In this document: piece by piece, positions 502 to 21,073 of the stretch
Numbering within the stretch: the stretch's first letter is position 1
Layout of the letters: the number at the start of each line of letters is the position of its first letter
Sequence record: MT811961.1
Direction: 5' to 3' (one strand)
DNA: 64,000 nt
Translations under genes and position numbers: made by a program
Notes under the pieces: generated by a model
What the model was told of the DNA's origin: nothing
The model's input: the letters and a program-made list of their open reading frames with translations, nothing else
Database searches by the model: none

Positions 502-507
502 TTAAGC

Positions 508-540
508 GAAAAAAAAATACCCACCCCGAAGGGCGGGAAG
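508..540 (-). terminator. Intrinsic terminator of the Ro60-like gene
   Basis: Hairpin at 520-537 preceded on + by an A run (U tract on -). Confidence 0.6.
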
Positions 541-624
541 AAATAGTATCTTAACCAATTAGAAGAACCAGTAAGCCCTCACTTACTCTGTCCCGAAGCT
601 TTTTAAAAAGCCATACTATTTGGT

Positions 625-2175
625 TTATTTTGCGAGGAAGATATCTACAAGCTTGGTTTGCAGAGTACCGATTCCTTTTACTGTTAACAGTCCAGCATGA
701 CGAGGTTCATCCAGAATCACTGTAGCGTCTTCTACGGCGACATGATGAACTATCTTAGTCAATGGGTTACGTCCAGTCAAATACGTATCCAGGGCGTCTA
801 GGAAGCCTTTACGGAAGTGTTCTGACTTAACCACTGGTCGATGTTCATAGATAACCACATTGTCATATGCTACCGGCTGTGTCATCAGAATCTGAATAAA
901 CGACATCGAAGGCATAACAACTCGATCTTTAGGAACTACACGCAGATGATCATAAAGGGCATCGACAGTAACGTTCTTAGGATCTAATACAAATGTACCT
1001 TCTCCAACAATAACAAGATTGCAATGAAGTGACTTGGCACGATCAAGTGCACCGGCAACAACTTCTTTAGAAATCTCATCCCAGTTAAGGAAAAGGAATA
1101 CTGCATTGTTTTCAATACCACGTTCAGGATATTCAACTTCTTCATAGCGACGAAGTAGCAAACGTCTTGTTTCAGGGAAACGTTCTGCATCCAAGGCCTC
1201 ACGATAAATCAATAGATCCACTGGTGTGATGCGCTGGTCTCTTAGCCAACCAGAAACAATACACATAAAGCGATCTGCTAGTTTGTCATCCAAGAATTCA
1301 AACGAAGGATCTATTTTTGCGATTTGCAGGAAGTTTTCCGGAGCTACATGTTTGCCATAGAATAATGCGCTCAGTATCTCAGCATAGTACAAGAACTTCT
1401 TCGGATAGACAGTGTGGTCGAAAGGTAAACCTTCTATCATCTTCGCAGCGGTCTCTACAGAGCCTTTAGCGCACAAGTTAAGGCCTAACACCTCTGAATA
1501 CGTTAAGAAGCGCTGAGGGACTTCTGAGGCGTCTCCACGATATCCTTTGATAATTCGCAGACATGCATCCTGTAGGTCATCACTGCCACGCAGAAACAAA
1601 CGACGTACAAGACTACGGTGGCTAAATGATATCGGTTTTTCATCGAACTGTACCGTTACCTTTTTATGGGCCAATACCTCACCGAGTAGATCACGAGGGT
1701 CTCGTTCAAGATACCAGCGACTAAGTACTTTCTTAACCATGCGGCCAAAGCCACGATAGTAAGAGATGAAACACGCAAAGCGAAGAATGTCTTCTGCATC
1801 CATACACAGATCTACTGCTGTATTTAGAGCATAGCTACTTGCTTCGAAGTCATCCGTATTGCCGGCTACCTTAGCCAGGATGAATAACCGATTTGCTTTT
1901 GTTTCTTTTGTAAATGAATACGATTGGGATACAACAAAACTAGTGATCCCTCTACCGCGTTGCTTGATCTGTTCCTCATAGCCATTGAAAGCCAAGTCGG
2001 AGTAAACTTGATCAGCACAGTCGATAGATGCCACATGACCATTCGAGCCCGTCAATAGAATGCGCTTCAGTGTAGTCTCTAAACTAATCACATTACGTTC
2101 TTTAAGGGAATCCAGCAAAGTACTTAATTCTACTTCGCCTTCGAATAATGTCTGGGTGATTTTATTTTTGTTCAT
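625..2175 (-). CDS. rsr: Ro60/Rsr-like TROVE-vWA RNA-binding protein with degenerate MIDAS motif
   Basis: 516 aa with ordered Ro60-like blocks: LKRILLTGSNG, GFGRMVKKVLSRWYLERD, SFSHRSLVRRL, and C-terminal ALDTYLTGRNPLTKIV...ILDEPRHAGLLTVKGIGTLQTKLVDIF. SD tgagga precedes the ATG. Confidence 0.8.
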   Translation of the reverse strand: MNKNKITQTLFEGEVELSTLLDSLKERNVISLETTLKRILLTGSNGHVASIDCADQVYSDLAFNGYEEQIKQRGRGITSFVVSQSYSFTKETKANRLFILAKVAGNTDDFEASSYALNTAVDLCMDAEDILRFACFISYYRGFGRMVKKVLSRWYLERDPRDLLGEVLAHKKVTVQFDEKPISFSHRSLVRRLFLRGSDDLQDACLRIIKGYRGDASEVPQRFLTYSEVLGLNLCAKGSVETAAKMIEGLPFDHTVYPKKFLYYAEILSALFYGKHVAPENFLQIAKIDPSFEFLDDKLADRFMCIVSGWLRDQRITPVDLLIYREALDAERFPETRRLLLRRYEEVEYPERGIENNAVFLFLNWDEISKEVVAGALDRAKSLHCNLVIVGEGTFVLDPKNVTVDALYDHLRVVPKDRVVMPSMSFIQILMTQPVAYDNVVIYEHRPVVKSEHFRKGFLDALDTYLTGRNPLTKIVHHVAVEDATVILDEPRHAGLLTVKGIGTLQTKLVDIFLAK

Positions 2176-2189
2176 AACAAATCCTCAAT

Positions 2190-2237
2190 AAATAAAAGAG
2201 GTATAGAGTACGGACGACCCACAAGGGCCGTCCGTAC
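2190..2237 (-). terminator. Terminator/attenuator between the candidate Y RNA and the Ro60-like gene
   Basis: Minus-strand hairpin gtacggacggccc-ttgt-gggtcgtccgtac followed by ctcttttattt. Confidence 0.65.
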
Positions 2238-2258
2238 CTACCTGTCCTCTCGGACAAT

Positions 2259-2345
2259 TCAACGAGCGAGGTCTAAACCTACACAGGGCGACTCACTGGG
2301 GTAAAGACCCAGGGTCGACCTGATTCGATCAAGCAGCTCGGCATG
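2259..2345 (-). ncRNA. Candidate YrlA-like Y RNA (circularly permuted tRNA-like module)
   Basis: On - strand: closing stem cgagc/gctcg, T-arm-like gcttg-ATCGAAT-caggt, closed acceptor-like hairpin, GG-containing D-like loop. It lies directly upstream of the Ro60-like gene. Confidence 0.45.
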
Positions 2346-2439
2346 CATGGTCCTACAATGTAGCTCCATGACTCACATTCAAATGCACAGTTTCATTTGG
2401 AGTTCCGACATGATACGCAAGCGTTCATACAGAGTTGTG

Positions 2440-2456
2440 CATACTATTAGGTATAG
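2440..2456 (-). promoter_or_regulatory. Class II (TATG-type) phage promoter driving the Y-like RNA / Ro unit
   Basis: Minus strand ctatacctaatagtatg, near-identical to copies at 6077 and 16220. Confidence 0.6.
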
Positions 2457-2463
2457 ATGTTTT

Positions 2464-2493
2464 TTTTTCATTGGTTCATGAGTTCTATATTAC
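2464..2493 (+). promoter_or_regulatory. Class I (early, TATATTAC-type) promoter
   Basis: tctatattac at 2484-2493 with upstream TTTCA. Matches the phiKZ early consensus TATATTAC. Confidence 0.65.
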
Positions 2494-2534
2494 CAGGGTA
2501 GATAGATACATTAAAAACTAAAAGGAATAAACCA

Positions 2535-3161
2535 ATGGAAGATATTAAATTCAATACCGTGCCAGCTGGCCTACACTTCAACGACAAACTTGAAGCAACA
2601 TTCTACCACGAGGAAGAAGCAGTCTCGTTTCTACTTCAATTACTTACACAACGCAAATCAGATACTCCGCTGTATCTTGTGGCGTTTCGCAATGGACCAC
2701 TACTGAAGTATCTTGTTACTGGCCGTCCAGAAAACGAAGAGGAAGATTTCCTGCGTTGGACAGGCTACCGATACTATAGTGCCAAACTAGTTAAAACGAG
2801 TCATCCTTCGATGCGCCGTCTGTGGTTAAACCAAGAAGGCGTATTTGATATGATGGATGCAGCCGGCGTTCCATTAATCCAGTGTCGCTACTTTGCTGTG
2901 GTTGACAAAGAGATCACCGAAAAGATGGAATATCATGGAGAGGATCTAAATCACGATACTGTTTCTAGTCTTCTTCATCGCTACACAAAGACCATTGCCG
3001 GCGAGGGTGATGGCAATCCAACTAACCGTTATTCGGCATCCTGTCCGGTAGAGGAGAATCTCATCGTAGTTTCTATTCCTCTATCTGACGATGCCTTTCC
3101 ACTAAAATACCATTGGGAGAAACACCATGTCTATAGCACATCTGATGCAAGCGGCCTATAA
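2535..3161 (+). CDS. Hypothetical early protein, 208 aa
   Basis: SD aaagga plus ATG, downstream of the early promoter. No recognised motif. Confidence 0.75.
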   Translation: MEDIKFNTVPAGLHFNDKLEATFYHEEEAVSFLLQLLTQRKSDTPLYLVAFRNGPLLKYLVTGRPENEEEDFLRWTGYRYYSAKLVKTSHPSMRRLWLNQEGVFDMMDAAGVPLIQCRYFAVVDKEITEKMEYHGEDLNHDTVSSLLHRYTKTIAGEGDGNPTNRYSASCPVEENLIVVSIPLSDDAFPLKYHWEKHHVYSTSDASGL

Positions 3162-4285: not shown

Positions 4286-4291
4286 CATCAT

Positions 4292-4337
4292 GGAGAGGGG
4301 TTATCCTCTCTCCTGCTCTACCTCTTTTTTCTTTTTT
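4292..4337 (+). terminator. Intrinsic terminator
   Basis: ggagagggg-ttat-cctctctcc followed by a T tract. Confidence 0.7.
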
Positions 4338-4405
4338 AAATTTAAAATAACAGACCATTCTAATCGTTTAGTTTTCCAAAAGGGGGAACCGTCTGGGAGG
4401 GGGTT

Positions 4406-4552
4406 TTAGCGTTAATCCTATTAAGACTTAATAGAGAGCTAGATACAGCTAGATAGAGATCATCTAGATCAGAGATAGATGAGAACTAGTAGCTAGCTAA
4501 GTAGATAGGATATCATCGATAGAGAGGGATAGGGACACTGGGATAACGCTAA
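4406..4552. repeat. AGAT/GATA-rich low-complexity tract flanked by a 9-bp inverted repeat
   Basis: ttagcgtta (4406-4414) and taacgctaa (4544-4552) enclose about 10 (A/G)GAT(A) units. Confidence 0.7.
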
Positions 4553-4592
4553 TACAAGCACCTAGATAAAAATTTTCGATTTTTTTTTTCAG

Positions 4593-4628
4593 CTGGCTCG
4601 AAAGAGCTAGTGTTATTATTTTTTTTTT
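4593..4628 (+). terminator. Probable intrinsic terminator
   Basis: ctggctc-gaaa-gagctag followed by a T run. Confidence 0.5.
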
Positions 4629-4704
4629 CGTATTTTGTGACCTATGTGAATTCTGTTGAAATACGTGTATGGGGATATGAGATTTCACGTAGACGGAGAA
4701 ATAC

Positions 4705-4735
4705 CCACTCCCTCCCCCGTTAAGGGGAGAGGTGG
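4705..4735. terminator. GC-rich hairpin, terminator-like
   Basis: ccactccctcccc-cgttaa-ggggagaggtgg. Confidence 0.45.
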
Positions 4736-5580
4736 ATACTTCAATGCGGATAACTCTGGATACTGGGGAATTTTCTTTAAAGTTAATTCGATAGTATTGA
4801 GTTGTGTTGGATCAGACGAGTGTATCTGATACCGATAACTTCTGTGAAAGTTATCACTTAGCTATATAAGTTCGATATCTTCCACATAACCCATGAGGAA
4901 GTATTTACTTATTAATCTGATAGATACATCAGATGAAAATGGATAATGGTCTTAGAGACACATACAGGGACTCTAAGGAGTTAACAATATCATTAACTCA
5001 CAGGGTTTCTAACTAAGTCCTTTAAGAGAAGCAAACAAAATAGAAACTTTGTTAAGATATAAAGGCTCATAGTGGAATTCAAAAGATCTTAATATATTGT
5101 GTCGTAGAATAAAAAACAACCTTATCACCTAGTGTAATAAAATTTTGATATGTTATAAATTCATGTTAGTTAAGTTAGATTATGATATTGTATCTAGTTT
5201 TACTAAGATGAAGTTACACATCATGAGATTCTACTACATAATATCCACGAGATGTAATTACCAACAAATCCATATTTTCTATCAGAGATATAAATAATCA
5301 TGATTCCTCCCTCACGGGAGAAATCTACAAAATCATCTTTATGAGAAAAATAACCACGCGCTCTCGCGCGTTATTATATTTATCTTTATCTTTAGATAAA
5401 GTAAATGGACCTCTCTTTATATTTATTTAACCTGTTATTATTTCTTTTTACTAATTATATCTAAAGATATAAGTATAAAGATATATTAAGCTCGTGTCAA
5501 ATAATTTAATCAGCTGGTTAATTTTGATGAACTGTGGACAAAGCCAGTCACCATAAGGCCTGAGAAAAGTTTTAAGAGAT

Positions 5581-5714
5581 TATACCCAATCTTGTAGACA
5601 ACCATGTTATGACGACGGCGTGGATGAGATCACTGGCGAGTAATCTCTGCATTGTCTATCTCCTCTGAATTACCATCCCTCTCCCACTAGGGAGGGGGGT
5701 AGGTATTATTCTTT
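5581..5714 (+). ncRNA. Candidate small RNA unit U1
   Basis: Promoter-like tatacccaatcttgtag, closing stem agacaa/ttgtct, inner gagat/atctc hairpin, terminator 5671-5714, no ORF. Confidence 0.45.
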
Positions 5715-5741
5715 GTCCTGATGGAAATAAAAAAAAAACAC

Positions 5742-6072
5742 ATACACCCAATAGTATGACTTCAGTGAACCATTAATTGCTCTCCTAAGTGTTGATGTAT
5801 CTCGTTTAGTCCTTTCTTACATTGTTCGGTTCCTGTAAACCGATGGTGCATGATAGTTTCTCTGATCGCCTCCCTTGTGGAAGTTATTTGAGTGAAGCCT
5901 CCAATTTAGATTGTTTTAGTTGTGATGCCTCCTGACCTCAGGTTTGGAGGCTGCCTTCTAAAGTCATCTGCATGAGATTGACCCATTGCAGTTTTACCTT
6001 ATGATCTGCAACGAAACCGTTAAGAGTGTGAAGCCTCCCTGCCTATGGCGGGGAAGCTAATTATTCTTTTAT
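5742..6072 (+). ncRNA. Candidate structured small RNA unit U2 (about 310 nt)
   Basis: Promoter-like atacacccaatagtatg, long-range helix atgactt/aagtcat, several hairpins, terminator 6032-6072. Confidence 0.5.
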
Positions 6073-6076
6073 CAGT

Positions 6077-6258
6077 TTATACCTAATAGTATAGTAAAAG
6101 TGTTGATCTCTTTCTGCTTTTTCTGCATGCCTATTTCCTTGGGCACGTCATCGTTTTGGAAACTGTTCGCTCCTCTGAGCGTGGTGGCTTTCTGATATTA
6201 GACATAATGATTCCTAGAGCTACCCTCCTGCCTTTGGTGGGAGGGTGAATTTCTTTTT
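6077..6258 (+). ncRNA. Candidate small RNA unit U3
   Basis: Promoter-like ttatacctaatagtata, hairpins such as cgctc-ctct-gagcg, terminator 6222-6258. Confidence 0.45.
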
Positions 6259-6267
6259 AACCGTCGT

Positions 6268-6571
6268 GTCTAATGATGTAGCAACGAATTACCATTTGTT
6301 GATTAAAATGCTTTTAATGAATTACCTCAATAAAGCTGAATTCATTGTCGGAGGTCAAGTCCTGTTACCGACTGACAGTGAAGTAGTGGTGGTGTTATTG
6401 CATCGTCCTCGATCTGGACTTTCCTTAGGGTCCAAATAGTAATTGTCTGAAAAGTTACTGCTTTTTTAAATTTCATAACGTTTGTATCGTTATGGGTTGA
6501 CTCAGGAAGAGTCGATCCTTAAGCATCGATGGTGGTGGGGGTGTTGTCCCTCGCCCCGCATCTTATTTTTT
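6268..6571 (+). ncRNA. Candidate small RNA unit U4 (may encode a short peptide)
   Basis: Promoter-like gtctaatgatgtag, hairpins cataacg/cgttatg and gactc/gagtc, terminator 6528-6571. A weak ORF ends at 6439. Confidence 0.35.
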
Positions 6572-6576
6572 ATGTA

Positions 6577-6708
6577 GTCACCTAATCTTATGGTTAAGTG
6601 ACGTATCCAATTCTTTGGTCGGGATTGGACACCTGGATTCTTTCAGGTTCTCTCTTGCTATTCCTCCTGCCCTTCGGGGTGGGAGGTTATAGTTTATTTT
6701 TTGTTTTC
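6577..6708 (+). ncRNA. Candidate small RNA unit U5
   Basis: Promoter-like gtcacctaatcttatg, two hairpins each near attcttt, UUCG terminator 6663-6708. Confidence 0.45.
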
Positions 6709-6795
6709 CTTATTGACAGCGAATCCTATGGGTATAATTTTAGTTAATTAAAGTTACTCCTTCAATCGTATTAGTTAATAAGAGGTAGGCGAAGT

Positions 6796-8406: not shown

Positions 8407-8436
8407 AATCCCAAGCCAATTTGTAATCTATATTAC
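8407..8436 (+). promoter_or_regulatory. Class I early promoter
   Basis: tctatattac at 8427-8436, with aatcccaag ending 11 nt upstream. Confidence 0.6.
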
Positions 8437-8469
8437 TTCGTTGGTGTTTAATCTTCTAAGGAAAAAACT

Positions 8470-8787
8470 ATGGATGCAATTTATACGATCGGCAATGCCG
8501 GCTTCTTTGAGGATTTCAAGGAAGTAGTTGAGGACGTAAAGAATCCCAACTATCCGGATATGATCTTAGCTTGGGTATTGGCAGTCATTGAAAGGCAGAC
8601 GGGACGCCGTCTGGCTACCGACGAATCTATTTGTACAGATGGATTCGCTTTGTTGTCAAAGTCATACGAAGACCTCATTGTTTATATAGCGGATTTGCAA
8701 GTCCAAATCACTGAACGTCCTTTGTCGGACAAACCACTGAAGTTGGAGTTGCTGGATTTCGAAACCATCATTTTGAGAGAAGTATAA
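8470..8787 (+). CDS. Hypothetical protein, 105 aa
   Basis: SD aagga, first gene of a tightly coupled operon. Confidence 0.7.
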   Translation: MDAIYTIGNAGFFEDFKEVVEDVKNPNYPDMILAWVLAVIERQTGRRLATDESICTDGFALLSKSYEDLIVYIADLQVQITERPLSDKPLKLELLDFETIILREV

Positions 8788-16078: not shown

Positions 16079-16108
16079 GATTTCAAGAAACACACATGTC
16101 TATATAAC
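16079..16108 (+). promoter_or_regulatory. Class I early promoter, distal, for chimallin
   Basis: GATTTCAAG-N11-TCTATATAAC. Confidence 0.6.
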
Positions 16109-16219
16109 CCAGATGTTTATGAAAGAGTATTTCAAAATTAACACTTGGTGTTTATAATATAGGAAGTGATCAGTTGATCTCTTTCGATAATGAATCTCCC
16201 AGTAAAAACTTGCTAGTGT

Positions 16220-16236
16220 TTATACCTAATAGTATG
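16220..16236 (+). promoter_or_regulatory. Class II promoter for chimallin
   Basis: ttatacctaatagtatg. Confidence 0.6.
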
Positions 16237-16287
16237 ACACTCGTACTGGGAAACCAGTACGGGGTGATTACCACCCCCTTTAGAGTT

Positions 16288-16317
16288 GATTTCAAGAAAT
16301 ATTGATTTCTATATAAC
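16288..16317 (+). promoter_or_regulatory. Class I early promoter, proximal, for chimallin
   Basis: GATTTCAAG-N11-TCTATATAAC. Confidence 0.65.
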
Positions 16318-16385
16318 AATGATGGATTGGAACGTTAAACCAATCAATTCGAATTGATTAACCATAAAGAAACCAGGAGTCCGCG

Positions 16386-18323
16386 ATGACATTCGTAGCA
16401 CCAAACGCACAACAAAACAAACCAGCTGAAACTCAAGTAGAAGTAGCTCAGCCACAAGTGCAACCACAAGCAGCAGCACAAACTGCTCAACCACAACAAC
16501 CTGCGCAACAAACTGGTGGCTTTAAGTCTATGCTTGCAGCGTTCGGTCACACTCAAGTATCTTCTCTAGGTGAAGGTACATTCGCTAAGTTCGTAGAAGC
16601 GACTGAAGAAATCCAAAAAGGCGACGGCTCTGCTGACGCAGTTAAGTTCTTCCACGCTAAGCCAGCTGATCTAGCTCTACCGATTATGGTTTACGCTAAG
16701 AAAGTTCAAGCTCGCGTTTACTTCTACGCTCTATTGCCAGAAGCACTTCTTTACGCACCAATGCGTCAACACGAAGAGCTAGTTAACAAAAACTTCGCTG
16801 GCGGCGGTAAGAAAATCACAATCGACTTCCCAGTTTCTAAATGTTGGAACGAACGCTACATCGGTAAAGTACGTGCTTTCCTAGCAGAGAAATTCCAAGT
16901 AGCTGGTGAAGCAGTTGTACCTGTACACTTCTACGCTGTAGGTAAGAACCAACCAATCCTTGAAGAAGGTAACGTTGAGCGCATCTACAACCTAGCAGCG
17001 AACGCAATCAAGTCTAAAGCAAACCCTGCGAACTTGGTTGACGTGTCTCTATTCAAGAGCCAAGAAGTTCAAGTTGACGTTGACACAGAAATCCTACCTG
17101 GTCAAAACGTTGTAATGAGCAACGGTCGTGCAACAGCATGTGACGCAGTTATCACTGTTCGCGCTTCTGAGCGTAAGAACAACAGCTTCGACCCACATGA
17201 CGACGGTATGTCTGCACTGCTATCTCGCACAGCAGTTAAGTTCGACACTATCCGTACTCCTGGTATCATGCCACAAATGCAACCAGGTATGATGCACAAC
17301 GGTGCTCGTCCAGAAAACCATGCGCTACTAGTACTAACAGGTGTTGATGCATCTGAGTCTTGTGCACGTGTAACTATCGAAAACCCACTGACTCCTGTGA
17401 TCGGTCTAATGTCTACAACTCTGTTGGCATCTGGTCGTAACTGGGAATCAATCTTCGCTAACCCTGCTAAGCGTGGTCCTATCTCTCGTGATCTAGGTGT
17501 ACTAGGTTACCAATACGAACCATACGCAGGTGCTGGTGTTCAGTTCACACCTAAGCCAAAAATGATTGAGTACACTCAAGCAGCTTCTTCTACTGACTCT
17601 GTTACATTCCGTGCATTCTGTGATGCGTACTTCGTGCACAACTCAATGACACTAGCAATGGACATCGGTATCGGTACTGCTGAATCTTGGACTCAACAGC
17701 TATTCCTAGCTGCGGCTAAACGTGTATCTGGCGCTAACGATGCGTTGATCAACCTGTTCGATGCAATGACTGGTGGTGAGTTCTCTAAACAGTGGGCTCA
17801 AGCTAAGGACAAAGAAGTTGTTCAAGCTAACACAGTTATCGTTCACGGCGGTGAGTACAACCTGCCTGATGGTTCTCCATCTGACATCCGTCACATCGAT
17901 ACGCTATTTGCAGTAGCAGCAGCTAAAGAGCAAGCAGCATCTATCGATTCTCCAGTGAATGCATTCTCTGAATCTTTCATCCCTGGTGCAACTGACGGTG
18001 CTCAAGGTCTAGAACGTCTAGACGGTCGTCGTAAAGATATCGTTGCTCTTGAGCCATCTGCTGAAGGTAACTTCGATACTCTATACATCCGTGTGTTCTT
18101 CAACCCAGAGCTTGGTCCACGCATGGCAGCAGCTATGTCTGTAGCGGGCATCAACATGAACCCACGTGGTCTAGTTGATACTCAAATCATCAGCCAGCTA
18201 GCAAGCGGCTTCGTATACGGTCAAGCAATTGACGGTAACGTAGTTAACAATGTGTTCCGTGCAAACGTTGGTGCAGCAGGTAGCCAATTCGGTAACCACA
18301 TCCCTGGTCACATCTACATCTAG
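16386..18323 (+). CDS. chmA: Chimallin, phage nuclear shell protein
   Basis: 645 aa, extreme high-expression codon bias, disordered Q/A/P N-terminus. Position directly upstream of nvRNAP beta' is the hallmark ChmA synteny. Not confirmed by alignment. Confidence 0.8.
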   Translation: MTFVAPNAQQNKPAETQVEVAQPQVQPQAAAQTAQPQQPAQQTGGFKSMLAAFGHTQVSSLGEGTFAKFVEATEEIQKGDGSADAVKFFHAKPADLALPIMVYAKKVQARVYFYALLPEALLYAPMRQHEELVNKNFAGGGKKITIDFPVSKCWNERYIGKVRAFLAEKFQVAGEAVVPVHFYAVGKNQPILEEGNVERIYNLAANAIKSKANPANLVDVSLFKSQEVQVDVDTEILPGQNVVMSNGRATACDAVITVRASERKNNSFDPHDDGMSALLSRTAVKFDTIRTPGIMPQMQPGMMHNGARPENHALLVLTGVDASESCARVTIENPLTPVIGLMSTTLLASGRNWESIFANPAKRGPISRDLGVLGYQYEPYAGAGVQFTPKPKMIEYTQAASSTDSVTFRAFCDAYFVHNSMTLAMDIGIGTAESWTQQLFLAAAKRVSGANDALINLFDAMTGGEFSKQWAQAKDKEVVQANTVIVHGGEYNLPDGSPSDIRHIDTLFAVAAAKEQAASIDSPVNAFSESFIPGATDGAQGLERLDGRRKDIVALEPSAEGNFDTLYIRVFFNPELGPRMAAAMSVAGINMNPRGLVDTQIISQLASGFVYGQAIDGNVVNNVFRANVGAAGSQFGNHIPGHIYI

Positions 18324-19750: not shown

Positions 19751-21073
19751 AAAATAAAACAATACCTCTAAGGAGGGTACATGGAAATCGTGATCAACGG
19801 CATGATTTTCAGACGCTCTGGCCAGCATCCTTCACTTGCAGTCTCTGTTTGTGGAAGGGTCTATAATCTGAATTTAAAACAAGAAGCAGAGATCAATCCA
19901 CCAAAGGAAAATTGGTAGCTGACTCTAACCTCACCGGATACGAACAAGACGATTCTCTTGCATCGTCTCGTTGCCGAATCGTGGGTTATAAATCCAGATC
20001 CGTTATTGTTCAAGGTCGTCAATCATTTAAATGGCGACAAGCACAACCCCCATGCTAGAAATTTGGAGTGGACTACCTATCGTGGTAATCTTCTACATGC
20101 CTATGCACTGGGGCTGAGGACTGAAATGAAGTCCTTGGAAGTTTTCGACAAAGTCAAGAAAATTTGGTTTAAATCGGATGGCGTCAATGCGACGTCAGAA
20201 AAGATCGGTTTGTCTTCGGCTCAGCTTTCATATCATCTGAAAGTTTCTGGTTGGTATGAGAACGATAGTCATATCGTACAACTGCCCAATCTAGAAGAGC
20301 GAGTAATTCCAGGTACGTTATCGGTAACTGATTCTGTTTATGCTAAGCATATCGAAACAGGAAAAGTTTATGTCGATGTCAATGTCGCATCACTGGCAAG
20401 ACAGATAAATGTACCAAAATCAAATATCAAGCGGGTATTAAAGAAAGGCAAGGAGTACCCAACGGGTGGTTTCTTGTTTAGTCTCGATGGTGAGTTTCCT
20501 GAAACTTTCAGGTACAATCATCGCACTGCGGTGAATTATTGCCTGGTTAATGAAACTGGCGATGAAATCACTGGAACTAGTATTCGCGATCTTATATCGA
20601 AAACAAAGATTAACGGAAAACGACTCAGTAGGATGAAGAAGGAAAATACTTCTTTCAAAGGCTGGAAGTTTAAATTGTAAGTCCGCCCCTATGGTGACAT
20701 ACGGGTGAGAGTGTGTTAATTGCTGGTAAAGTCTAAAGCCCAACACCAAAACGGAATCCGAAAGGATAGACGGCAATGGTGACGAAAGTCAGAAAAGACG
20801 TTGGGATGGCCTATGGTGAGAGCCTAAGGGTTTTGATAATGGACAATTCGAGCAGCCAAGTGCCTAAGTATATCCGTGAGGATAGATATGGTAAAGGTTC
20901 AACGACTAAGGGATTCTGCACCCTGTAGGGGCCAAGTGGCTTCCAAACGCACACGCCTCGGGTTGACTGAAGAAGTCTTATCCCCGAGGATTGATATAGT
21001 CTCGGCGTCCAGTGAAAACCTGGAGAAGTTCATAAGAGAACTGCATAGATTAACGACCTATGTGAAGACTCCG
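19751..21073 (+). mobile_element. Group I self-splicing intron with homing endonuclease
   Basis: Core elements: aattgctgg (20718), aattcgagcagcc (20845), gttcaacgacta (20897), gatatagtct (20993). P3 gtgtgtt/aacgcac, P7 gacta/tagtc, terminal G. Removal restores NADFDGD in frame. Confidence 0.92.
19781..20680 (+). pseudogene. NUMOD4-HNH homing endonuclease with in-frame TAG at 19916-19918
   Basis: SD aggagg plus ATG 19781 is in frame with LHRLVAESW..NHLNGDKHNPHARNLEW. One amber codon falls at codon 46. Confidence 0.75.

What the first reader, a model, noticed from the sequence alone, without database searches (positions are those of the whole stretch)
2205..2456. Candidate Y RNA (permuted tRNA mimic) in its own transcription unit just upstream of the Ro60-like gene
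Seen on - strand: promoter motif (2456-2440), then cgagc (2340-2336) pairing with gctcg (2267-2263). This encloses a T-arm-like gcttg-ATCGAAT-caggt, a stacked closed hairpin cgac-ctggg/cccag-gtcg and a GG loop (aggttt). A terminator lies at 2237-2190. The flanks tgCCGA and TTGA resemble the GUCCGA/UUGAC Ro-binding helix. Known: YrlA-type Y RNAs have this T arm, closed acceptor-like stem, D arm order and lie next to rsr. Inference: this is the Ro partner and may act as a tRNA decoy. The D arm is imperfect and the T loop has A at position 54.
Basis: partly seen in the sequence, partly recalled or inferred. Interest (0 to 1): 0.85.

Follow-up and report, generated by a model that had tools for sequence, protein, structure and literature searches.

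The report
Phage Ro60 partner RNA, not tRNA-like

Summary
The window is Vibrio phage vB_pir03.

- **Protein:** ORF 625-2175(-) is a real but very divergent Ro60. It has no Pfam hit. Profile-profile comparison with canonical Ro60 gives 99.7% probability, and the nine best fold matches in the PDB are all Ro60 structures. Its MIDAS motif is lost.
- **RNA:** the roughly 250-nt stretch upstream (about 2440 to 2187, minus strand) is under purifying selection. It is 89.5% identical to phage C-ZP2022, against 56-68% at third codon positions. Its architecture is kept in six syntenic phage loci: a promoter-like box TAYACCYAATAGTATG, an invariant helix YGAGC/GCUCR with a U/CUC internal loop, a long hairpin of variable sequence, a small hairpin, and a long terminator whose U-run abuts the Ro60 ribosome-binding site.
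- **tRNA mimicry fails:** three substitutions in C-ZP2022 break the proposed T stem but fit the long hairpin. The T and D sequences are absent from the other homologues. Rfam YrlA gives no hit, although it finds two YrlA-like RNAs at the same position in the related phage BONAISHI, which has a canonical Ro60.

The best reading is a non-tRNA-like Y-RNA analogue co-transcribed with Ro60. Binding to the protein is untested. A second conserved small RNA lies just downstream of the gene.

The parts
2440..2455 (-). Promoter-like box TATACCTAATAGTATG. It ends in TATG, and by analogy with phiKZ late promoters the final G (2440) may be +1.
   Evidence: The box is conserved upstream of the RNA in all homologous loci. 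There are five copies with up to 3 mismatches in the window against 1.3 expected, and 1 of 100 shuffles reaches 5. The other four copies each precede a short stretch that I read by eye as ORF-less and hairpin-rich. The TATG/+1 rule comes from phiKZ nvRNAP (PMC4666361). That pir03 encodes multisubunit RNAPs comes from PMC7765460.
2341..2439 (-). 5' domain of the RNA, variable in length, containing the conserved AGUCA motif (within 2366-2374).
   Evidence: The alignment shows about 50 nt present in pir03 and C-ZP2022 but absent from L003 and L005, with AGTCA invariant.
2334..2340 (-). Invariant 5' motif CGAGCUG. CGAGC is the 5' strand of helix P1, U is the internal loop, and G opens P2.
   Evidence: CGAGCTG is invariant in five loci. 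sm033 has UGAGCUG.
2271..2334 (-). P2, a long imperfect hairpin of variable sequence with a pyrimidine-rich apical loop (UCUUUAC, 2301-2307).
   Evidence: Each locus folds into a hairpin here although the sequences are unrelated, with z from -1.7 to -3.9. Between pir03 and C-ZP2022 there is a G-C to C-G change, a G-U to A-U change, a G-C to G-U change and a shifted mismatch.
2263..2271 (-). Invariant 3' motif CCUCGCUCG. C closes P2, CUC is the 3-nt side of the internal loop, and GCUCG is the 3' strand of P1.
   Evidence: CCTCGCTC is invariant in six loci. The last pair of P1 is C-G in pir03 and C-ZP2022, U-G in sm033, and C/A in L003, L005 and L006.
2242..2257 (-). P3, a small hairpin UUGUCC-GAGA-GGACAG.
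   Evidence: There is a compensatory U-A to C-G change in C-ZP2022. A hairpin of different sequence sits at the same place in L003, L005, L006 and sm033.
2187..2241 (-). P4, a long GC-rich terminator hairpin (2203-2241) followed by the U-run CUUUUAUUUAUU (2187-2198).
   Evidence: Folds are. The top of the stem (CGGAYGGCC/GGKCGKCCG) is conserved and the lower stem covaries across loci. The hairpin is 97.7% identical to C-ZP2022.
625..2186 (-). Shine-Dalgarno sequence (2182-2186) and CDS (625-2175) of a divergent Ro60/TROVE protein, 516 aa, with the MIDAS motif lost.
   Evidence: hhalign against canonical Ro60 gives 99.7% probability, E 2.5e-26, over 459 columns. The AF2 model has pLDDT 86.7 and pTM 0.84. 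The nine best Foldseek hits in the PDB are all Ro60 structures, led by D. radiodurans Rsr at E 1e-12 and TM 0.68/0.70. The protein itself has no Pfam hit. DxSxS is absent.
505..627 (-). Second conserved small-RNA unit just downstream of the Ro60 stop codon. It has the same kind of box (612-627), a 5' hairpin (598-611), a middle hairpin (570-587), a conserved single-stranded UCUYC..UGGUUAA stretch (550-567), and a terminator (520-537) with a U-run.
   Evidence: It is conserved in six loci. RNAalifold predicts 16 pairs, 13 of them with double changes. There is no credible Rfam match.
2484..2494 (+). A different box, TCTATATTACC, facing the divergent protein gene 2535-3161(+). It is context for the locus, not part of the RNA.
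   Evidence: It is invariant in the homologous loci. The same box sits 33 nt upstream of the ATG at 8470, and variants of it lie upstream of the ATG at 16386.

Best explanation
The region encodes a phage small RNA of about 250 nt (roughly 2440 to 2187, minus strand).

Transcription (inferred): it starts at a phage-type promoter box and ends at a strong hairpin plus U-run that sits directly on the ribosome-binding site of the Ro60-like gene. Most transcripts would stop there and give the free RNA. Read-through would give the Ro60 mRNA, so RNA and protein come from one unit with the RNA in excess.

Function (inferred): the RNA is the functional counterpart of a Y RNA for this divergent Ro60 ring. 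The invariant module is the likely protein-binding site. That module is helix YGAGC/GCUCR with its 1x3 internal loop U/CUC. The variable long hairpin P2 and the 5' domain would then gate the ring or tether it to another factor, for example a host 3'-5' exoribonuclease, as in Ro60-Y RNA-PNPase complexes. The RNA has no tRNA-like domain.

Shown here: the RNA is conserved, structured and under selection; the neighbouring protein is Ro60-like; a related phage has YrlA-like RNAs at the same position.

Inferred only: transcription start and end, read-through, binding to Ro60, and any effector.
For: 1. Ro60 identity of the neighbour. hhalign gives 99.7%, and the nine best fold matches are all Ro60 structures. 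The profile finds canonical TROVE+vWA_Ro60 proteins at E 1e-12 to 1e-5 among 1.8 billion proteins.

2. Selection on the RNA. It is 89.5% identical to C-ZP2022, against 56-68% at codon position 3. The GenBank mini-ORFs in the region lose their start codon or reading frame in C-ZP2022.

3. Conserved architecture with divergent sequence in six syntenic loci.
- A covariance model built from pir03 and C-ZP2022 alone finds L003, L005 and L006 full-length, at the expected place, with E 0.0015-0.02.
- One of 200 decoy loci carrying the same 17-nt motif scores as high.
- 92.8% of cells are paired and 28 of 48 pairs change on both sides, against 29-46% paired in the slid controls.

4. Positional homology. 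BONAISHI shares flanking genes and has a canonical Ro60. It has two Rfam YrlA matches at the same place upstream of that gene.

5. Correlated change. The lineages whose Ro60 has become undetectable to Pfam and has lost MIDAS are the ones whose upstream RNA is no longer YrlA-like.

6. Precedent. Thermus phage phiLo Ro60 binds two Y-like RNAs encoded upstream of its gene (PMC12135203). Chen et al. 2014 report likely Y RNAs encoded near Ro60 in more than 250 bacterial and phage species (PMC4201824).
Against: - There is no binding or expression data of any kind.
- The whole neighbourhood is syntenic, so conserved adjacency alone does not prove a functional link.
- The known Ro-binding signature GNCGAAN0-1G (PMC4201824) is not met. 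pir03 has GCCGAGCUG, three homologues have AUCGAGCUG, and sm033 has AUUGAGCUG.
- Helix P1 is internal to the predicted transcript. In known Y RNAs the Ro-binding stem is formed by the two ends.
- The more distant relatives L007 and L008 keep the box-RNA-terminator layout but not the P1 motif.
- The same promoter box precedes several other stretches in the window that I read as ORF-less and hairpin-rich. The RNA could therefore be one of a set of phage sRNAs unconnected with Ro60.
- Covariation rests on five or six sequences and on an alignment fitted to the model.
Confidence: 0.5

Rival explanations
1. The region is a cis-acting leader or attenuator of the Ro60 mRNA. The structured region exists only to control read-through of the terminator or translation of the gene, possibly by the Ro60-like protein binding its own leader. 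It has no role as a free RNA.
For: In all six loci the terminator U-run abuts the Shine-Dalgarno sequence, and the gene has no room for its own promoter. The gene must therefore be transcribed through the element.
Against: I saw no alternative (antiterminator) pairing by eye; this was not searched systematically. The terminator stems are very long and stable, 17-22 bp. L007 has two box-plus-terminator units in tandem, which looks like separate RNA genes. The same box-RNA-terminator layout occurs downstream of the gene, where no ORF follows. This rival is not exclusive of the best explanation.
Confidence: 0.2
2. The region encodes an independent phage small RNA, for example a base-pairing regulator of host or phage mRNAs. 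It merely lies next to the Ro60 gene within a conserved gene order.
For: The same 16-nt box precedes other stretches that look ORF-less and structured, at 5743, 6078, 16221 and 612. The ORF-less 4290-6790 region is patchily 90-98% conserved with C-ZP2022. Synteny of the whole neighbourhood is conserved.
Against: BONAISHI has bona fide YrlA-like RNAs at exactly this position. The RNA type and the Ro60 type change together across lineages. The 17 invariant nucleotides form a helix-loop module, not a single-stranded seed.
Confidence: 0.2
3. One reading: a YrlA-type Y RNA with a permuted tRNA-like domain (T arm, closed acceptor-like stem, D arm) that acts as a tRNA decoy.
For: In pir03 and C-ZP2022 the order 'AUCGAAU loop, closed hairpin, GG-containing stretch' resembles the T-AS-D order. 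The RNA lies next to Ro60. A related phage does carry YrlA-like RNAs.
Against: There is no Rfam YrlA hit at E<=10 in 2100-2560, none at E<=0.1 in the whole window, and none at E<=1 in the homologous loci. The positive control scores 59.3 and 35.8 bits. The T stem loses 3 of 5 pairs in C-ZP2022, while the same changes fit the long hairpin. L003, L005, L006 and sm033 lack the T-loop and D-loop sequences altogether. ARAGORN finds nothing.
Confidence: 0.04

Closest known systems
YrlA (Rfam RF02553; Chen et al. 2014, PMC4201824)
   Same: It is encoded next to a Ro60 homologue and is a highly structured RNA. YrlA-like RNAs occupy the same position in the related phage BONAISHI.
   Different: There is no match to the covariance model, and no conserved T arm, D arm or tRNA-like tertiary-contact nucleotides. 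The 5' GNCGAAN0-1G motif is not met. The RNA is about 250 nt rather than about 110 nt, and it has a built-in terminator.
Yrl1 and Yrl2 of Thermus phage phiLo (PMC12135203; PDB 9L5Y)
   Same: They are phage RNAs encoded upstream of a phage Ro60 gene in the same orientation, with a stem, internal loop and stem layout. They are not described there as tRNA-like. The phiLo Ro60 is among the fold matches of the pir03 protein.
   Different: The phiLo RNAs were picked by a CGAA motif in a large internal bulge. Here the invariant motif is CGAGCUG/CCUCGCUC with a small 1x3 loop. Binding is shown for phiLo and untested here. I did not compare the phiLo RNA sequences directly.
Metazoan Y RNAs (Rfam RF00019) and D. 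radiodurans Yrn1
   Same: The proposed role is the same: an RNA partner of a Ro60 ring, with a conserved helix-plus-bulge protein-binding module and a variable effector module. From memory of Green et al. 1998 (not checked here), the Ro site is a conserved helix flanked by a 1-nt bulge and a 3-nt bulge. That is topologically like P1 with its U/CUC loop.
   Different: There is no sequence or covariance-model similarity. The conserved helix is not formed by the RNA's 5' and 3' ends. The GGUCCGA/UUGAC sequence is absent.
Ro60/TROVE proteins (Pfam PF05731 + PF25045), for the neighbouring gene
   Same: It has the full-length Ro60 fold, a HEAT-repeat ring plus a vWA-like domain. The RGxGR, WY and SHR motifs are shared.
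   Different: It falls below the Pfam thresholds, shares only 14-20% identity, and has lost the MIDAS DxSxS motif.

Membership tests
YrlA (Rfam RF02553) | Match to the family covariance model | tested here: not met
   There is no hit at E<=10 in window 2100-2560, none at E<=0.1 in the whole window, and none at E<=1 in L002, L003, L005, L007, L008 or L249. As a positive control, the BONAISHI upstream region gives 59.3 bits (E 8e-13) and 35.8 bits.
YrlA (Rfam RF02553) | Nearly invariant T stem-loop resembling the tRNA T arm | tested here: not met
   The candidate GCUUG/CAGGU stem loses 3 of 5 pairs in C-ZP2022. The AUCGAAU loop is absent from L003, L005, L006 and sm033. Position 54 is A.
YrlA (Rfam RF02553) | Nearly invariant D stem-loop with GG | tested here: not met
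   No D stem can be drawn. In the supported fold the GG-containing stretch pairs with the 'T-loop' region, and it is not conserved in the homologues.
YrlA (Rfam RF02553) | Closed stem-loop of variable sequence between T and D | tested here: inconclusive
   A closed hairpin exists (CGAC-CUGGG/CCCAG-GUCG), but it is simply the apical part of one long hairpin, P2.
YrlA (Rfam RF02553) | 5' motif GNCGAAN0-1G, the presumed Ro-binding site (PMC4201824) | tested here: not met
   pir03 and C-ZP2022 have GCCGAGCUG. L003, L005 and L006 have AUCGAGCUG. sm033 has AUUGAGCUG.
YrlA (Rfam RF02553) | tRNA-type modifications and recognition by tRNA enzymes | not testable with these tools
   This needs RNA from infected cells.
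Y RNA in the functional sense (RNA partner of Ro60) | Encoded next to a Ro60 homologue | tested here: met
   The RNA ends 11 nt before the start codon of a protein shown to be Ro60-like. The arrangement is kept in six loci.
Y RNA in the functional sense (RNA partner of Ro60) | Specific binding to the Ro60 protein | not testable with these tools
   This needs EMSA or RIP.
Y RNA in the functional sense (RNA partner of Ro60) | Conserved bulged helix formed by the 5' and 3' ends | tested here: inconclusive
   A conserved helix with a 1x3 internal loop exists (P1). In the predicted primary transcript it is internal, flanked by about 100 nt on the 5' side and two hairpins on the 3' side. Processing is unknown.
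Ro60/TROVE (neighbouring protein) | TROVE and vWA_Ro60 domains by Pfam | tested here: not met
   Neither the pir03 protein nor any of its close relatives has a Pfam hit.
Ro60/TROVE (neighbouring protein) | Homology to Ro60 over the full length, and the Ro60 fold | tested here: met
   hhalign gives 99.7% probability, E 2.5e-26, over 459 columns. The nine best Foldseek hits are all Ro60 structures, with TM 0.68-0.70 to Rsr. The only PDB sequence hit of the profile is Xenopus Ro60.
Ro60/TROVE (neighbouring protein) | MIDAS motif DxSxS in the vWA domain | tested here: not met
   The motif is absent in P0001-P0008 and present in the canonical Ro60 rows of alignment A4.

The most novel reading that the evidence does not exclude
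A clade of jumbo vibriophages has replaced the tRNA-like YrlA partner of Ro60 with a new, unrelated class of Y-like RNA. This RNA carries a YGAGCUG/CCUCGCUCR helix-loop module. It co-evolved with a MIDAS-less Ro60 ring that is invisible to Pfam. The gene is flanked on both sides by dedicated small RNAs driven by an sRNA-specific phage promoter box. The downstream RNA carries an anti-Shine-Dalgarno-like single-stranded motif.
Probability: 0.35. Interest if true: 0.65.

Novelty: new variant of a known kind. Interest (0 to 1): 0.5.

Why it matters
Ro60-Y RNA particles are known from animals, bacteria and a few phages. Until now the bacterial and phage RNA partners have been found mainly by their tRNA-like (YrlA) signature or by a CGAA motif.

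This locus shows a phage lineage in which the Ro60 protein and its neighbouring RNA have both drifted out of reach of the standard models, while a sister phage keeps the canonical pair at the same locus. If the RNA does bind the protein, two things follow. tRNA mimicry would not be required for a Ro60 partner RNA. And the two phage lineages would form a natural pair of systems for asking which part of a Y RNA the ring actually reads.

It also flags unannotated RNA genes in published jumbo-phage genomes that are being considered for aquaculture phage therapy.

Tried and rejected
- **Direct family scans.** Pfam and PHROGs scans of the Ro60-like protein gave nothing. phmmer against the PDB also gave nothing. 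Only profile and fold methods worked.
- **Protein-guided locus searches.** Searches in viral, metagenome and genome collections found no further relatives. A search with a canonical Ro60 in genome contigs, meant as a YrlA positive control, also found nothing. BONAISHI later served as the control.
- **DNA pattern search.** CGAGCTG-N38-68-CCTCGCTCRT in viral and metagenome contigs returned only chance matches. None of those loci encodes the protein. I used 200 of them as decoys. One decoy (L126, GC 0.64) scored 19.6 bits, as high as the true homologues, so the covariance-model scores alone are weak evidence.
- **Model R1 limits.** R1 did not detect sm033, L007, L008 or BONAISHI. sm033 was recognised by eye from the invariant motifs.
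- **A 'bulged-C' reading of P1.** I considered U-A to C-G covariation around a bulged C, which would resemble the Ro site. sm033 (UGAGC...GCUCG) fits a plain terminal pair C-G / U-G / C-A at least as well, so I dropped it as evidence.
- **Coding potential.** The three GenBank mini-ORFs in the region lose their start codon or reading frame in C-ZP2022.
- **Sigma-70 promoters.** The consensus scan found none for the RNA. This phage encodes its own RNA polymerases, so that scan says little.
- **Attenuator.** I looked by eye for an antiterminator alternative to P4 and saw none.

Full report
**Source and context.** The window is Vibrio phage vB_pir03 (MT811961.1, bases 62001-126000), a 286-kb jumbo phage of Vibrio harveyi. 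Its only close relative in the phage collection is Vibrio phage C-ZP2022, 82.6% identical over the first 4.5 kb. GenBank labels ORF 625-2175(-) 'TROVE containing domain protein' and places three 30-36-aa 'hypothetical proteins' on the region of the finding. The pir03 paper mentions a Ro60-related protein (ORF 64). It notes that phages can carry YrlA, but it identifies no RNA (PMC7765460).

**Is the neighbour really Ro60?** Direct scans fail. There is no Pfam or PHROGs hit and no PDB hit by phmmer.
- A profile of the five closest proteins has a single PDB hit, Xenopus Ro60 (E 0.045, collinear).
- In an exhaustive search of 1.8 billion proteins, the same profile gives 238 hits at E<=0.001. Every distant hit that I then checked against Pfam carries TROVE plus vWA_Ro60.
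- Profile-profile comparison with 16 such proteins gives 99.7% probability and E 2.5e-26 over 459 columns, nearly end to end.
- An AlphaFold2 model has pLDDT 86.7 and pTM 0.84. Its nine best PDB matches are all Ro60 structures: D. radiodurans Rsr (E 1e-12, TM 0.68/0.70), human and Xenopus Ro60, and Thermus phage phiLo Ro60.
- The MIDAS motif DxSxS of the vWA domain is absent from this clade.

The gene is therefore a full-length but strongly derived Ro60.

**The observation.** The 271-nt region folds much better than shuffles, with z = -4.6.

**Comparative evidence for a functional RNA.** Relatives of the protein (37-42% identity) lie in four further syntenic loci, besides pir03 itself and its close relative C-ZP2022. 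These are three Logan contigs (L003, identical to L004; L005; L006) and Vibrio phage vB_VpaM_sm033 (L249). More distant relatives are L007, L008 and BONAISHI.

The upstream spacers align into the following modules.
- An invariant box GGTAATATAGA. Read on the other strand (TCTATATTACC), it faces the divergent protein gene. The same box also precedes other protein genes.
- A second box, consensus TAYACCYAATAGTATG (2455-2440).
- A 5' domain of variable length with an AGUCA motif.
- The invariant motif CGAGCUG.
- 42-62 nt (65 nt in sm033) of unrelated sequence that folds into a hairpin in every locus (z from -1.7 to -3.9).
- The invariant motif CCUCGCUC(G/A).
- A small hairpin.
- A long GC-rich hairpin with a conserved top, followed by a U-run.
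- Within about 10-25 nt of that, the Shine-Dalgarno sequence and start codon.

Between pir03 and C-ZP2022 the RNA is 89.5% identical (the terminator 97.7%). Codon position 3 of the flanking genes is 68% and 56% identical. The GenBank mini-ORFs lose their start codon or reading frame in C-ZP2022.

**Structure.** The supported fold has four helices.
- P1 is CGAGC (2340-2336) paired with GCUCG (2267-2263).
- A 1x3 internal loop (U / CUC) follows.
- P2 is one long imperfect hairpin (2334-2271) with apical loop UCUUUAC.
- P3 spans 2257-2242 and P4 spans 2241-2203.

Of the 13 differences between pir03 and C-ZP2022 in this 152-nt stretch:
- two pairs change on both sides (G-C to C-G in P2, U-A to C-G in P3);
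- three change compatibly;
- one lost pair is offset by a new neighbouring pair;
- one pair at the base of P2 is lost;
- three lie in loops and one in the U-run.

A covariance model built from these two sequences alone recovers L003, L005 and L006 full-length at the expected position (21.6, 18.2 and 17.0 bits; E 0.0015-0.02). Among 200 decoy loci chosen because they contain the same two motifs at the same spacing, one reaches that level (19.6 bits) and the rest stay at or below 13.9 bits. On the model-fitted alignment 92.8% of cells pair and 28 of 48 pairs change on both sides. The slid controls show 29-46% paired. That alignment leans towards the model and has only five real rows.

**The tRNA-mimic reading fails.**
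Two of those substitutions keep their pairs in the long hairpin. The third is offset there by a new neighbouring pair.
- The AUCGAAU and GG stretches do not exist in L003, L005, L006 or sm033.
- Rfam contains YrlA (RF02553). It gives no hit at E<=10 on 2100-2560, none at E<=0.1 in the whole window, and none at E<=1 in the other family loci.
- The same type of search on the BONAISHI spacer gives two YrlA matches, 59.3 bits (E 8e-13) and 35.8 bits (E 5e-6). Both show clear T arm, closed stem and D arm order. The test therefore had power.
- The published Ro-site motif GNCGAAN0-1G (PMC4201824) is not met in any member.

**Why a Ro60 partner is still the best reading.**
- BONAISHI shares flanking genes with pir03. 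Its gene at this position is a canonical Ro60 by Pfam, with two YrlA-like RNAs directly upstream in the same orientation.
- The pir03-type RNA thus sits where a Y RNA sits in a sister phage. The lineages in which the protein diverged are the ones in which the RNA changed.
- Thermus phage phiLo likewise encodes two Y-like RNAs upstream of its Ro60, and these have been shown to bind it (PMC12135203).
- The 17 invariant nucleotides forming a helix-plus-asymmetric-loop module are what a protein-binding site would look like. They sit inside an RNA that is otherwise free to vary.

All of this is circumstantial. Binding is inferred.

**Transcription.**
- The box ends in TATG in pir03, C-ZP2022, L006, L007, L008 and BONAISHI.
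- In phiKZ the non-virion RNA polymerase starts at the G of a TATG motif (PMC4666361). pir03 encodes multisubunit phage RNA polymerases (PMC7765460). Position 2440 is therefore a reasonable guess for +1.
- The box occurs five times in the window with up to 3 mismatches, against 1.3 expected. By my reading of the sequence, each copy is followed by a short ORF-less, hairpin-rich stretch.
- The U-run of P4 touches the Shine-Dalgarno sequence in every locus, so the Ro60 gene must be read through the terminator. The RNA is thus not an independent unit in the strict sense, and a leader or attenuator role cannot be excluded.

**Other findings.**
- A second conserved small-RNA unit lies immediately downstream of the Ro60 stop codon (about 612-509, minus strand). 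It has the same box, a covarying 5' hairpin and middle hairpin, a conserved single-stranded UCUYC..UGGUUAA stretch, and a terminator. It has no credible Rfam match.
- The 2.5-kb stretch 4290-6790 has no credible ORF but is patchily 90-98% conserved. It carries two more box-plus-terminator units.

**Verdict.** It is a conserved, structured phage RNA coupled to a divergent Ro60 gene, and most likely a non-tRNA-like Y-RNA analogue (confidence about 0.5). It is not a YrlA-type tRNA mimic. I rate it a new variant of a known kind.

Noticed in passing
window 505-627 (-): A second conserved small-RNA unit lies directly after the Ro60 stop codon. It has the box TAAACCAAATAGTATG, a 5' hairpin, a covarying middle hairpin, a conserved single-stranded UCUYC..UGGUUAA stretch that resembles an anti-Shine-Dalgarno sequence, and a terminator plus U-run. 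It is present in all six family loci and is 93% identical to C-ZP2022.
   Followed up: partly
window 4290-6790: This 2.5-kb stretch has no credible ORF; GenBank has only calls of about 30 aa. It is patchily 90-98% identical to C-ZP2022. It holds two more copies of the sRNA-type box (5743-5758 and 6078-6093, +) and four hairpin plus U-run terminators (about 6036-6075, 6222-6260, 6530-6570 and 6660-6700). The motif TGA(A/T)GCCTCC recurs at about 5890-6040. It looks like a cluster of non-coding RNA genes.
   Followed up: partly
L250 (Vibrio phage BONAISHI MH595538.1) 1952-2071 and 2154-2265 (+): Two YrlA-like RNAs (Rfam RF02553, 35.8 and 59.3 bits, below the gathering score of 69) lie upstream of the canonical Ro60 gene ORF49c. 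No RNA feature appears in the part of the record I looked at.
   Followed up: partly
window 16221-16300 (+): Another exact copy of the box TATACCTAATAGTATG is followed by two short hairpins (GUACUGG-GAAA-CCAGUAC and GGGGUG-AUUA-CCACCCC). After these comes the promoter-like box of the next protein gene.
   Followed up: no
window 2484-2494, 8427-8437; variants at 16099-16109 and 16308-16318: The box TCTATAT(T/A)AC recurs. The copies at 2484-2494, 8427-8437 and 16308-16318 lie 33-70 nt upstream of protein-gene start codons. It is invariant in the homologous loci. It is probably a distinct class of phage promoter from the sRNA-type box.
   Followed up: partly
window 20646-21025 (+): A group I intron (Rfam RF00028, 54.7 bits, above the gathering score). 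By the coordinates in the pir03 paper it lies between an HNH endonuclease ORF and an RNA polymerase beta-prime fragment, so it probably interrupts a phage RNA polymerase gene.
   Followed up: no
window 625-2175 (-), residues about 357-365: The Ro60-like protein and its relatives P0002-P0008 lack the MIDAS DxSxS motif that the canonical Ro60 rows of the alignment keep.
   Followed up: partly
window 2162-2257, 2259-2369, 2379-2471 (-): Three GenBank 'hypothetical protein' CDSs of 30-36 aa overlap the RNA. In C-ZP2022 one loses its ATG and one is frameshifted. The third begins with TTG and overlaps the terminator, the SD and the start of the Ro60 CDS. They are probably over-annotation.
   Followed up: yes
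L007 3405-3590 and 3712-3985 (+): This distant relative has two box-plus-terminator units in tandem upstream of its Ro60-like gene. Neither has the P1 motif or a YrlA match.
   Followed up: partly
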